Positions 59,818-64,000 of a stretch of 64,000 nucleotides of DNA are shown piece by piece. The notes under the pieces were generated by a model. It did no database searches and was not told where the DNA came from. It worked only from the letters and a program-made list of their open reading frames with translations. The position numbers were made by a program, and so were the translations under genes. The first letter of the stretch is position 1. Each line of letters opens with the position of its first letter. The stretch comes from Laetmonice hystrix (Eukaryota). The stretch is from positions 58,280,001 to 58,344,000 of the forward strand of contig OZ249436.1 of NCBI GenBank assembly GCA_965235115.1. Reading direction: 5' to 3'.

Positions 59818-60740
59818 CTGTCCCAGACCCACACCTGTCTCAAACCGGCTGCCATCTTTGATCCATTCTGTCCAAGGCCCATCTGTCTCAAACCGACTGC
59901 CATATCTGATTTCTCCTGTCCCAGACCCAAACCTGTCTCAAACCGCCTGCCATCTCTGATCCATTCTGTCCCAGACCCACACCTGTCTCAAACCGACTGC
60001 CATCTCTGATCCATTATGTCCCAGACCCACACCTGTCTCAAACCGACTGCCATCTCTGATCCATTCTGTCCCAGACCCACACCTGTCTCAAAACCGACTG
60101 CCATCTCTGATCCCTCCTGTCCCAGACCTACACCTGTCTCAAACAGACTGCCATCTCTGATCTCTCCTGTCCCAGACCCACACCTGTGTCAAACCGACTG
60201 CCATCTCTGATCCCTCCTGTCCCAGACCTACACCTGTCTCAAACAGACTGCCATCTCTGATCCATTCTGTCCCAGACCCACACCTGTCTCAAACCGACTG
60301 CCATCTCTGATCTCTCCTGTCCCAGACCCACACCTGTCTCAAACCGGCTGCCATCTCTGATCCCTCCTGTCCCAGACCCACACCTGTGTCAAACCGACTG
60401 CCATCTCTGATCCCTCCTGTCCCAGACCTACACCTGTCTCAAACAGACTGCCATCTCTGATCCCTCCTTCCCATCCTGTCTCAAACCACCTGCTCAAACC
60501 GCCTGCCATCTCTGATCCATACTGTCCAAGACCCACAGATTGCCCCAGACTGACCATCATCTATGATCCTTCTCTCTCAGACTGACCACCGTCTCTGATC
60601 CTCACTGTCCCACACCCACACCCCTACTGTTCCAGCCGCAGACGGACTGCCATCTATAAACCTTACTTTCTCAGACTTATTGCCAGTCTCACAAGGACTG
60701 TCATCTCTGATCTCTACAGTGTCCCAGACCTCTGGACTCT
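59818..60740 (+). repeat. 50-bp minisatellite, ~13 good copies to ~60470, then a degenerate tail
   Basis: Unit CTGTCCCAGACCCACACCTGTCTCAAACCGACTGCCATCTCTGATCCATT, with ccatt, tctc and ccctc end variants. Diverged relics continue to ~60740. Confidence 0.97.
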
Positions 60741-61374
60741 GGACAGCTAACTCGTATCCCAGAAACCTTCCGGCATCGATCCTCTTCATGAGGCTGCCGT
60801 GCTGCCTGACCAAATAGCTGCTACTCATAACAACGGGCTGCATATAGCAGTGGAAGAATTGTGAAGAGGCGATTCCCTGATAGGAGGATTGGTGGCAATC
60901 TGCAAAGCTTTACTAGCCTGATACCTGGCCCAGTCTGACCATTACTGGTCAGACAGATGTACCTCCTTATCGGACTTAGTGGCCTCACCACTAATCCTCA
61001 TACCAGTTATGATTGGAAGCTTAACAGCCTTTTTATTTGCCAGTATGACGGTTTGCAATATTCATCAACATTCTATGCGACTGAGGCAGAATCATTCAAC
61101 ATCTCATATGCTAAATATTCAAAATATTCCTTGTTTTAAAAACTGTCCATTTAAACCACTCCCTCAACTGAAGCATGAAATTAAATTTACCTTTTCATAG
61201 ATCTTCCTGACAATGACAAGAACTCCGTTATCAGTCTAATGGTTTTCAACTCACATGATTCAAAGTCTCCACAGACATCGGCAGTGTCATCCTAACCGTG
61301 TCGATTTAGTCCAAAGTAGGCCTATATCTCTATTTGGTCTCATTTCTTTTCTCCATGAGCTCTCGCATAGAAGT

Positions 61375-62289
61375 ATGCTGGAGAGGACATCTCTCAGAGC
61401 CGCTGCCAAGAGTGGTGGCTTCCTGGGTCTTCTCTTCGCAAAAACACCCTGATCACCAAGGCTGCCAGTACACATCAAACATCTCCGCATCTCTGTGATG
61501 CTCACTGGATGCCCCCCCCCCCCCTCCCCGCCCGTGTGGATGATCCCTGCCGGTGAGTTATCTTTGTCGTGTGAGTGGTCGCATGTCAGAGTGAATGACA
61601 CCATGGGTCTATAGGAGCCATGTCTTATCATCACATACTGATCGCTGGTCTCCACATTATTGTACTCATCACAAAGGGTGGGGCTCTTACTAACGGCAAT
61701 TGATGATGATAAACTATAGCGAGATACACGCGTTACAGGCCTGGGGCCCGTTGCATAAAAAAATCCCCGCCCGCTACGTCAAACTGCCCCGTTAAAATAG
61801 CGGGCACCTTTTAGGTGCCCGTTAAAAAACAACAGTTAACGGGAACTGTAGCGGGTGGGAATTTATTATGCAACGCAACATCCCGTTAACTGACCGTTAG
61901 CGGAGGATTTAACGGGCGGGTTTTTTTATGCAACGCGTGTATCTCGCTATAGTTTATCATCATCAATTGCCGTTAGTAAGAGCCTCACCCTTTGTGATGA
62001 GTACAATAATGTGGAGACCAGCGATCAGTATGTGATGATAAGACATGGCTCCTATAGACCCATGGTGTCATTCACTCTGACATGCGACCACTCACACGAC
62101 AAAGATAACTCACCGGCAGGGATCATCCGCACGGGCGGGGAGGGGGGGGGGGCATCCAGTGAGCATCACAGAGATGCGGAGATGTTTGATGTGTACTGGC
62201 AGCCTTGGTGATGAGGGTGTTTTTGCGAAGAGAAGACCCAGGAAGCCACCACTCTTGGCAGCGGCTCTGAGAGATGTCCTCTCCAGCAT
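61375..62289. repeat. Near-perfect ~360-bp inverted duplication (61375-61734 and 61932-62289)
   Basis: The arms differ by three substitutions and a 2-nt poly-C/G length difference. ORFs 61287..61655(-) and 62011..62211(+) begin with the same peptide. Confidence 0.98.
61744..61935. mobile_element. PIF/Harbinger-type MITE with truncated right TIR, at the centre of the inverted duplication
   Basis: CTG|GGGCCCGTTGCATAAAAAAA...TTTTTTTATGCAACG, lacking the terminal GGCCC|CTG. Internal hairpin cgggcacct/aggtgcccg at 61801-61821 and an extra ttatgcaacgc subrepeat. Confidence 0.85.
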
Positions 62290-64000
62290 GTACAAGTGCC
62301 GGCTATTCCAGCAGCTTTTCTTCAATGATCCTTCACTGTATATATAATGGCAGCTTGACGGACAGAATAGGGGGAGCCATGCGTGCGCAAGGATCGATCA
62401 AGTCAACAAAGCCAACGTCAAAATCTATCAAAAAGTAGGACTCGAGTGTCAGAGATATACTTCCAAAGCAACAATATCTATGATGGAAGTTGAAGCCGTA
62501 CGTCCATATGCCACATTACATTCATGATTATCACTGGTTACGGCACTATTTGAGTCGGTAATATAGATATTCCTTCATGCTGTATGTATGTAGCATTTAT
62601 CTTGACAATTAACACAGCTCCAAGGTTATCTTTTCCTACAATCTCATTATTTTTGATTTACTTTTCCAGCATGTAGCCAGAGTGGCTACGTTCACGTTCC
62701 GGTGTGGTGCCGCTGTGGAACTGCCGAAACCTACACTTAACTTTCGGAGTTGATGCATATCTTATACTGGGGAATTTCACTGTCAATTATCTTTGGCAGA
62801 ATGTGACGCATGCGAAATTCTAGACTTATTTAATCTTAAACCTACTTTAAGATACGGTGGTGATGAGGAAGCGGATGATAACCATAATACATAATCCGAT
62901 AGAGTACAGCCCACCCTCCCTAACATACAATTATTCTATCCTCGGGCCATACAAACGGTTTTAAGCCAGTAGCTGTCTGAAAGTTCTCCACTTCCTCAGC
63001 TATTCCTTGGCCTGTTCTTCTAAAGCTACCTCTGACCTATGATCCAAAGTCACATCAAATACCGTGGGACTACCCGTTCAATCTCAGTTCAGTCACCTCC
63101 CGAGTGTTTTGTTCACTTACACAGACACATCTACTCTCTTAAATACAGAATAAACCTCGACAGCCAACCCATCTCCGGCAAAACGGCCCACTGCAGAGCT
63201 TCACTTGGAATGTACGGTGGCCAAAATTGGCCGTAAGGACAAGAGGTTGTGTATAAATCCTTGACAAGCAGTGCTTTTAAGGCCTACTCTTAAGGAACGG
63301 TGCTTTGGCGAATAACGCTCTCTATAATGCCTTGAGTGCACCCATGAACAAAACAAGAGAAACAGGATTTCCACGAAGTTAAATATCCCAGTAAACAAAA
63401 TACAAAATACTCTGTGTGTGTGTGTTAATTTGCACCCCCACACCCACTCTTTGTTCAGTGTAGGCTGACTATATAACTGCCAATATTTACGATTAGGCCC
63501 CCAGTTGGGGGGGGATCTAACTGATCTTCCTATGTCCGATGTATGATTATTTTGAATACACGAAATCTTTGTGGTGTCCTGCGTTGCTCGTATGAATTTT
63601 GAGAGAAAGTTCCAGCGTCATCAAGGCCTAGACTTGTAACCCACGATACGTGGGGCCTTTCTCCTAGCCAGGCGTCCCGGTGCGGTCGACCGACCCACTC
63701 GATTCAGTCTGCCAGAACACAAGTGCCAAGCACGGTCCCCATGGGAGTTTCTGACCCTTGGGTCTCTGGCCTCCGCCTCGTCTGGACGACATGAAGACCC
63801 TTTTTCTGCCGGACCTACTGCCCTGTCCATTAGTCGTCTCTGCCCGACCAAAGCCTTAATTCAGTGCAGCTGATTTACAGTGAGTTACCGGTTGACCTAC
63901 CTTTAAACTCTCATCTTTCTAACCGCAACCTCCCCACCCCATCCCTTCCAATCCCCTTGGCGTGCCCCCACAAGGGGAGTCAGGACAGTAAGCACCCACT

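What the first reader, a model, noticed from the sequence alone, without database searches (positions are those of the whole stretch)
61375..62289. Recent fold-back duplication launched from a microhomology inside a Harbinger MITE terminus
Seen: the structure is A(360 bp)-ACAGGC-CTG-[MITE]-A'(358 bp, inverted). The MITE's right TIR stops at ...ATGCAACG and continues as CGTGTATCTC..., the reverse complement of the left flank ending CACGCGTT. The 4-mer CGTT/AACG is shared by flank and TIR, and the terminal GGCCC, the TSD and ACAGGC are skipped. The arms are ~99% identical. Inference: the nascent strand folded back via the MITE TIRs, slipped to the CGTT microhomology, copied 360 bp of flank, then rejoined unique DNA at ...CAGCAT|GTAC. 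Aberrant transposition is the alternative. The product is a ~915-bp hairpin that could behave as a new composite element with host-derived long TIRs or yield long dsRNA.
Basis: partly seen in the sequence, partly recalled or inferred. Interest (0 to 1): 0.72.

Follow-up and report, generated by a model that had tools for sequence, protein, structure and literature searches.

The report
Fold-back duplication at a MITE end
A 363-bp stretch of unique DNA beside a small transposon has been copied in reverse onto the transposon's other side, giving a 915-bp hairpin-forming locus; this is a tidy natural example of a known DNA-repair error (fold-back priming), not a new kind of element.

Summary
Arms 61375-61737 and 61929-62289 are inverted copies: 357 of 363 aligned columns match, with 3 substitutions, a 2-nt poly-C indel and 1 mismatch in the junction. 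They flank a 193-bp MITE. The arm and both outer flanks occur nowhere else in the 627-Mb assembly, so this is not a long-TIR transposon.

The MITE is multicopy (at least 344 candidates), has a CWG 3-bp target duplication, and ends canonically in ...ATGCAACGCACCC. This copy lacks the last 4 nt and the right duplication. The junction homology is AACGC (8 of 9 with neighbours), not the 4-mer CGTT, and sits where the MITE's perfectly paired terminal stem ends.

k-mer contigs from three runs of one sample carry the outer right junction at depth 26-37, about half to most of flank depth, so it is not a single chimeric read. The inner junction was not seen. The same contigs point to a second allele joining 61707 to 62286, without MITE or right arm; depths roughly fit a heterozygote.

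None of 34 other MITE copies has such a palindrome.

Best reading: fold-back priming or template switching at the MITE end, a known mechanism. It is a one-off event of moderate-to-low interest.

The parts
61375..61734 (+). Left arm A, the original unique flank. It is contiguous with the left flank L and ends in GCGTT (61730-61734), the template side of the junction microhomology.
   Evidence: arm alignment. (only two copies in the genome, both here). (contig 60434-61404 crosses the L|A boundary at full flank depth).
61735..61743 (+). ACAGGC plus the CTG left target-site duplication. This is single-copy spacer not copied into the right arm.
   Evidence: sequence. (other copies have CWG directly before GGGCCC; target roughly GNY-CWG-RNC).
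61744..61936 (+). MITE, 193 bp here. The left terminus GGGCCCGTTGCAT is intact. The right terminus stops at ...ATGCAACGC and lacks the last 4 nt (ACCC) and the right CWG duplication. Bases 61932-61936 (AACGC) are shared with the start of the right arm.
   Evidence: at least 344 candidate copies; 100% identical to the copy at C12:14650451. (canonical ends from 29 copies). (hairpin -57.3 kcal/mol, z -8.4; perfect stem ends at CGTTGCAT/ATGCAACG).
61937..62289 (-). Right arm A', an inverted copy of 61375-61729 of the left arm. With the shared AACGC it reaches 61932.
   Evidence: (arm contigs laid here; the reads give A at 62129, which is the left-arm state).
62286..62339 (+). Outer right junction ...CCAGCAT|GTACAAG (62289|62290) and the start of the unique right flank. 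GCAT (62286-62289) is also the point where the putative second allele joins 61707.
   Evidence: 80-nt unitig 62260-62339 at depth 33/25.7/37 in three runs; joint 61959->62286 on opposite strands in all three runs. (flank unique in the genome).

Best explanation
This is a real, one-off germline rearrangement produced by fold-back priming, that is, intrastrand or cross-fork template switching. A free 3' end arose at or just inside the right terminus of a young MITE. The source was either a break made there, plausibly by a PIF/Harbinger transposase cutting one end, or a nascent strand stalled at the MITE hairpin. The MITE's terminal inverted repeats snapped back and brought that 3' end next to the left flank. 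Instead of extending in the hairpin register, the end ...TGCAACGC paired 16 nt further out with the look-alike flank sequence GCGTTACA, and a polymerase then copied about 355 nt of the left flank. The new strand was rejoined to the right-hand chromosome at GTACAAG, possibly through a 4-nt GCAT homology. Shown: the anatomy, the uniqueness of the arm, the truncated terminus, the junction homology, and the presence of the outer junction in many reads. Inferred: the order of events, the source of the 3' end, and the polymerase and end-joining steps. The sequenced animal seems to carry it on one homologue only.
For: The arm and both flanks are single-copy in 627 Mb. The left MITE end and its CTG duplication are intact, while the right end is cut 4 nt short with no duplication; this polarity is what copying from left flank to right predicts. 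The junction shares AACGC, 8 of 9 with neighbours. The switch point coincides with the end of the perfectly paired TIR stem, because the canonical termini GGGCC/CACCC carry a 2-nt mismatch there. The outer junction unitig has depth 33/25.7/37 against flanks of 51/29/53 in three runs. Arm contig 62153-62289 in X3 has depth 71.5 against flank depths of 52.7-62.7 for two homologues, that is 26-31 per homologue. By my own rough arithmetic that is about three arm copies per diploid genome, which suits a heterozygote. Published yeast work shows this class of event: inverted duplications primed from ssDNA hairpins near breaks (PMC7467729), and short local fold-back insertions in which one end needs Pol delta synthesis and the other is captured by end joining (PMC11724301). 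PIF/Harbinger transposase genes are abundant and many have open frames, so end-cutting activity is plausible.
Against: The inner junction (61936|61937) was not among the read contigs listed, so it rests on the assembly alone. All three runs come from one sample, probably the assembled one. No allele with an intact MITE was recovered, so what was lost on the right is unknown. The putative second allele (61707 joined to 62286) shares the GCAT|GTACAAG breakpoint, which a simple one-step fold-back does not explain. The arms differ at 2-3 sites although the MITE is 100% identical to another copy. None of 34 other MITE copies shows the same outcome, so a MITE-specific propensity is not demonstrated.
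Confidence: 0.6

Rival explanations
1. A multi-step repair between homologues. A chromosome of the short type (left arm joined directly to GCAT-GTACAAG) broke and copied the 30 bp, the spacer and the MITE from a MITE-bearing homologue. It switched template at the MITE hairpin to copy the arm backwards, and re-annealed to its own right end through GCAT. The mechanism class is still microhomology-mediated template switching, but with the short allele as the recipient and not a later derivative.
For:: all three runs hold a contig reading left arm up to 61707 and then 62286 onward, so the short form and the fold-back form share the same right breakpoint. At three of four arm markers the contigs carry the right-arm state and at one the left-arm state. 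This suggests the short allele's arm resembles A' more than A, so the arm differences look allelic and not mutational.
Against: The record sequences could not be inspected and 38 of its letters were not placed. Contigs from a k-mer graph of a palindrome can be mosaics. The short allele could equally be a later centre-break deletion of the unstable palindrome. The model needs a third, unseen allele with an intact MITE.
Confidence: 0.15
2. An assembly artefact: a palindromic chimeric long read or a mis-join created the inverted copy.
For: The inner junction was not seen in the listed contigs. The only read sets available come from one sample. At 62129 the assembly disagrees with all three read sets. 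Poly-C and poly-G lengths differ between the arms, a typical error site.
Against: The A'|right-flank junction k-mers have depth 26-37 in three runs, and a random chimeric read would not recur at one site. Arm depth exceeds single copy in contig 62153-62289. Chimeric palindromic reads join at a fragment end without a spacer, whereas here there is a structured junction with microhomology at a MITE terminus.
Confidence: 0.07
3. Aberrant transposition: the transposase itself joined the MITE's right end into its own left flank by intramolecular strand transfer.
For: The breakpoint lies within 4-5 nt of the element's end. Harbinger transposases are abundant.
Against: Strand transfer uses the exact 3' terminus and makes a new 3-bp duplication at a CWG. 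Here the terminus is truncated, the joint is at GCGTT and not CWG, and there is no new duplication. Intramolecular transposition inverts or deletes flank and does not duplicate 355 bp of it (established knowledge of cut-and-paste elements, not tested here).
Confidence: 0.05
4. A larger transposon with 360-bp terminal inverted repeats (Foldback-like) into which the MITE inserted.
For: The overall shape is long inverted arms around a short centre.
Against: The arm has no other copy in the genome. Its inner 24-mer has only these two copies at up to 2 mismatches. There is no target duplication at the outer ends (AGT|ATGC... versus ...GCAT|GTA). The MITE is truncated exactly at the arm.
Confidence: 0.02

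Closest known systems
Fold-back inversions / inverted duplications primed from ssDNA hairpins at breaks (yeast: PMC7467729, PMC10622511; short local fold-back insertions: PMC11724301; human: PMC3907307)
   Same: Inverted copy of adjacent unique sequence. A single-copy spacer between the arms that corresponds to the hairpin loop. Short homology at the inversion joint. The second end captured with little or no homology.
   Different: Here the event is small (about 355 bp copied) and interstitial, and was resolved back into the same chromosome. It was not chromosome-scale with a terminal deletion. It is longer than the mostly 5-34 bp yeast insertions. The hairpin is supplied by a transposon's terminal repeats, and priming happened out of register, 16 nt beyond the hairpin base.
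Quasi-palindrome / short template-switch mutations at replication forks (own knowledge; no paper fetched here)
   Same: A nascent strand switches to the complementary strand at an imperfect inverted repeat and returns, leaving an inverted templated patch.
   Different: Those patches are usually a few to tens of bases. This one is about 355 nt and is accompanied by loss of the element tip and of an unknown amount of right flank.
PIF/Harbinger-type MITEs with 3-bp target duplication
   Same: The central element is about 195 bp and multicopy, with roughly 25-30-bp imperfect terminal inverted repeats and a CWG duplication.
   Different: No autonomous partner with the same ends was identified, so the superfamily label rests on the duplication and on the abundance of DDE_Tnp_4 genes.
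Foldback or long-TIR transposons, and hairpin-RNA loci born by inverted duplication
   Same: Long inverted arms around a short loop. A transcript would fold into a roughly 360-bp duplex.
   Different: The arms are single-locus host DNA. There is no evidence of mobility, transcription or small RNAs.

Membership tests
PIF/Harbinger-type MITE (central element) | 3-bp target-site duplication (TWA or CWG type) | tested here: met
   most of 29 other copies are flanked by matching CTG or CAG on both sides. The window copy keeps CTG on the left only.
PIF/Harbinger-type MITE (central element) | Short, non-coding, multicopy, with terminal inverted repeats | tested here: met
   at least 344 candidates, with the 40 scored at 93-100% identity; hairpin z-score -8.4; the TIRs are GGGCCCGTTGCATAAAAAAATCCCC and the reverse complement of GGGGATTTTTTATGCAACGCACCC.
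PIF/Harbinger-type MITE (central element) | An autonomous element with a DDE_Tnp_4 transposase sharing the same termini | tested here: inconclusive
   151 matches over the Pfam cut-off (720 candidates); none of 12 sampled loci has the TIR motif within 1.5 kb, and element ends may lie further out.
Fold-back (hairpin-primed) inverted duplication | Inverted copy of adjacent single-copy sequence, separated by a single-copy spacer | tested here: met
   The spacer is ACAGGC+CTG+MITE (61735-61931).
Fold-back (hairpin-primed) inverted duplication | Short inverted homology at the inversion joint, within a hairpin-forming sequence | tested here: met
   AACGC/GCGTT is shared. The joint lies at the end of the perfect TIR stem.
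Fold-back (hairpin-primed) inverted duplication | Origin at a DNA break or stalled fork, with polymerase extension and end capture | not testable with these tools
   Only the product is visible. The 4-nt truncation of the MITE end fits flap trimming of a 3' end but does not prove it.
Foldback / long-TIR transposon | Arms repeated at other loci, and a target duplication at the outer ends | tested here: not met
   the arm occurs only here. The outer flanks AGT and GTA are not a duplication.
Palindromic-read assembly artefact | Novel junctions absent from the bulk of reads | tested here: not met
   the outer right junction unitig has depth 33/25.7/37 in three runs. The inner junction was not shown, so this part is inconclusive.

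The most novel reading that the evidence does not exclude
Single-end cutting of young MITEs by Harbinger transposase regularly feeds fold-back priming. MITE hairpins would then be a recurrent source of long host-derived palindromes, which in turn seed hairpin-RNA genes or new long-TIR mobile elements. On this reading the short allele seen in the reads is the palindrome's centre-break deletion product, caught segregating in the same animal.
Probability: 0.08. Interest if true: 0.6.

Novelty: new member of a known kind. Interest (0 to 1): 0.3.

Why it matters
This is a clean natural specimen of a mutation class mostly studied in yeast reporters and cancer genomes. Every part is readable at base resolution: the hairpin donor, an out-of-register 5-nt priming site, the copied tract and the rejoining point. 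It also appears to be still polymorphic. It shows one way a transposon's terminal repeats can damage neighbouring DNA without transposing, and how a long perfect hairpin can arise from unique sequence. It does not reveal a new mechanism, no function is indicated, and it did not recur among 34 other copies examined.

Tried and rejected
- **Long-TIR element:** rejected, because the arm, its inner 24-mer and both flanks are unique in the genome.
- **Recurrence:** none of 29 full MITE copies or 5 copies with a non-canonical right end sits in a flank-derived palindrome. A search for the exact junction word found only this locus plus one unrelated 1-mismatch hit. The left-end pattern search only returned ordinary right TIRs read backwards, so it was uninformative.
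- **Coding content:** ten open frames of 71-156 aa between 56.5 and 63.4 kb gave no Pfam family above cut-off, so no exon is evident in or beside the arms.
- **Autonomous partner:** not found among 12 transposase loci.
- **Expression and small RNAs:** no RNA run holds the stretch.
- **Dating from arm identity:** rejected as unreliable. The flanks differ from the read contigs at about 2% (8 sites between 60930 and 61311), so arm differences may be allelic exchange. One of them (62129) is contradicted by the reads.
- **Organism:** not identified.

Full report
**1. Observation**

- The repeat finder reports two adjoining inverted pairs that together make arms at 61375-61737 and 61929-62289.
- A local alignment gives 357 identities in 363 columns. 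The differences are:
  - three substitutions: 61451/62213, 61537/62129 and 61681/61985;
  - a 2-nt difference in a poly-C/poly-G run;
  - one mismatch at 61735/61931, which lies in the junction and not in the copied tract.
- As single-stranded DNA the 915 nt fold into one long hairpin at -540.8 kcal/mol, against a shuffle mean of -129.7.
- This is far beyond chance.

**2. The centre**

The 198 nt between the arms match many places in the window's own genome (627 Mb in 35 pieces). There were 344 first-look candidates, and the 40 scored were 93-100% identical.

I lined up 29 other copies with their flanks. The canonical element is about 195 bp. It starts GGGCCCGTTGCATAAAAAAATCCCC and ends ...TTTTTTATGCAACGCACCC, flanked by a 3-bp CTG or CAG duplication in a loosely palindromic target (about GNY-CWG-RNC).
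- The two termini pair imperfectly: CC faces CA just outside CGTTGCAT/ATGCAACG.

The window copy:
- keeps its left terminus and the left CTG (61741-61743);
- stops on the right at ...ATGCAACGC (61936), so ACCC and the right CTG are missing;
- is 100% identical to the copy at C12:14650451, so it belongs to a very young subfamily.

Alone, the MITE folds into a hairpin (-57.3 kcal/mol, z -8.4) whose perfect stem closes at CGTTGCAT/ATGCAACG.

A 3-bp duplication is the PIF/Harbinger signature. DDE_Tnp_4 transposase matches are very abundant, with 151 over the cut-off and many open frames. I found no autonomous element carrying these termini among 12 loci, so the superfamily label is probable, not proven. 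Earlier notes of this scan also describe CWG-targeting MITEs as common in this genome, which agrees with what I measured.

**3. The junction**

- The right arm begins ...TGCAACGC|GTGTATC.
- The reverse complement of the left flank reads TGTAACGC|GTGTATC.
- The bases shared by the MITE end and the flank are AACGC (61932-61936, pairing with GCGTT at 61730-61734). That is 8 of 9 if the neighbours are counted.
- Extension in the plain hairpin register would have copied the left terminal bases, the CTG and ACAGGC. Those 16 nt are skipped.
- The switch point coincides with the end of the perfectly paired TIR stem.

**4.

*(a) Is the arm a multicopy TIR? No.*
- The 363-bp arm hits only its two copies here.
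- Its inner 24-mer has only these two copies at up to 2 mismatches.
- Both outer flanks are unique.

*(b) Is it an assembly artefact?*
- Only three public runs hold the stretch. All come from one sample and all are kept as k-mer contigs.
- Laid on 60400-63300, a contig crosses the left-flank|A boundary (60434-61404) at full flank depth.
- An 80-nt unitig (62260-62339) crosses A'|right flank at depth 33/25.7/37, where the flanks have 51/29/53.
- Its 30 arm letters are one short of the tool's bridging rule. They are what a 31-mer unitig starting at a branch must show.
- A junction at that depth in three runs is not one chimeric read.
- The inner junction (61936|61937) was not among the pieces listed, so it remains unverified.
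- Because the runs are probably from the assembled animal, this is not independent biological support.

*(c) Do other MITE copies sit in flank-derived palindromes? None did.*
- None of the 29 full copies.
- None of the 5 copies with a non-canonical right end.

**5. An unexpected second form**

In all three runs the arm contig carries a 92-letter extension at its inner end that follows neither inner path of the assembly. 54 of those letters lie on the opposite strand starting at 62286 (table 5).

Read on the plus strand, this is left arm up to 61707 followed directly by GCATGTACAAG... That would be an allele without the last 30 bp of the arm, the spacer, the MITE and all but 4 nt of A'.

Depths suit a heterozygote. 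Contig 62153-62289 in X3 has 71.5, against about 26-31 per homologue. By my own rough arithmetic that is near three arm copies per diploid genome once the k-mers around the arm difference are allowed for. The other arm contigs (62.2, 30.8, 42.9) are roughly compatible.

At three of four arm markers the contigs show the right-arm state. At 62129 they show the left-arm state.

I could not inspect the record itself, 38 of its letters were unplaced, and k-mer contigs of palindromes can be mosaics. I therefore treat this allele as probable, not established.

If it is real:
- GCAT (the reverse complement of the arm's first four bases, ATGC) preceded GTACAAG before the event and offers a 4-nt homology for the second joint.
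- The short allele is either the recipient of a multi-step repair between homologues or a later centre-break deletion of the palindrome.

An allele with an intact MITE, which must have existed because the left CTG target lies in sequence the short allele lacks, was not seen.

**6. Mechanism**

The polarity points to a 3' end at the MITE's right tip that folded back on the TIR hairpin, mis-paired one step further out, and was extended along the left flank before being rejoined. That polarity is an intact left end and duplication, a trimmed right end, a copy running from the flank-proximal homology outward, and no new target duplication.

This is the fold-back priming or template-switch class documented in yeast:
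- ssDNA hairpins mediate fold-back inversions, and short-stem hairpins act when close to the break (PMC7467729, abstract);
- in short local fold-back insertions one end needs Pol delta synthesis and the other is captured by NHEJ or alt-EJ (PMC11724301, abstract).

Large human inverted duplications are attributed to the same class (PMC3907307, title).

The product cannot say whether the 3' end came from a transposase cut at one MITE end or from a fork stalled at the hairpin. The closeness of the joint to the exact terminus (4 nt) mildly favours a cut followed by flap trimming.

Direct transposase strand transfer is unlikely. The terminus is not exact, the joint is not at CWG, and flank is duplicated and not inverted.

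**7. Age**

The 99% identity does not date the event. The flanks differ from the read contigs at about 2% (8 sites in 60930-61311). One arm difference is contradicted by the reads, and another is a homopolymer length. The remaining differences may come from allelic exchange on the left arm.

**8. Context and function**

- No Pfam family above cut-off in the ten open frames of 71-156 aa scanned between 56.5 and 63.4 kb.
- No RNA run holds the stretch.
- Nothing indicates that the hairpin is transcribed or mobile.
- The organism was not identified.

**9. Verdict**

This is a real and nicely legible product of a known repair error at a transposon hairpin. It is probably heterozygous and is a one-off among the copies sampled. 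It is a new member of a known kind, of moderate-to-low interest.

Noticed in passing
G000 C12:27.56-27.93 Mb and C1:26.03-26.08 Mb (outside the window): Harbinger-type transposase domains (PF13359) occur in two regular tandem arrays. One has about 25 or more copies at a period of about 12.95 kb, each with a 399-aa open frame. The other has 8 copies at a period of about 7 kb. A transposase gene amplified as a tandem array is unusual.
   Followed up: no
window 61707|62286 (joint seen in read contigs): All three read sets hold a contig joining the left arm at 61707 to GCATGTACAAG at 62286. It implies a second allele lacking 578 bp: 30 bp of the arm, the spacer, the MITE and the right arm. 38 further letters of that contig were not placed.
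   Followed up: partly
window 62129: The assembly has G, but contigs of all three runs read A, which is the state of the left arm (61537 T). This is either an assembly error or the minority allele.
   Followed up: no
window 60506-60714: A degenerate tandem repeat of 25-32-nt units (CAGACTGACCATCATCTATGATCCT-like, 66-88% identity) lies about 700 bp left of the palindrome.
   Followed up: no
L008 (G000 C1:55271001-55274195): Another copy of the same MITE sits inside a long tandem-repeat array. Its left and right flanks match each other in direct orientation at many offsets.
   Followed up: no
window 61829-61896: Read contigs show MITE variants that skip 37 or 59 nt of the internal region, the latter replaced by 26 other letters (tables 5 and 5c). 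These are probably other subfamily copies elsewhere in the genome and not variants of this locus.
   Followed up: no
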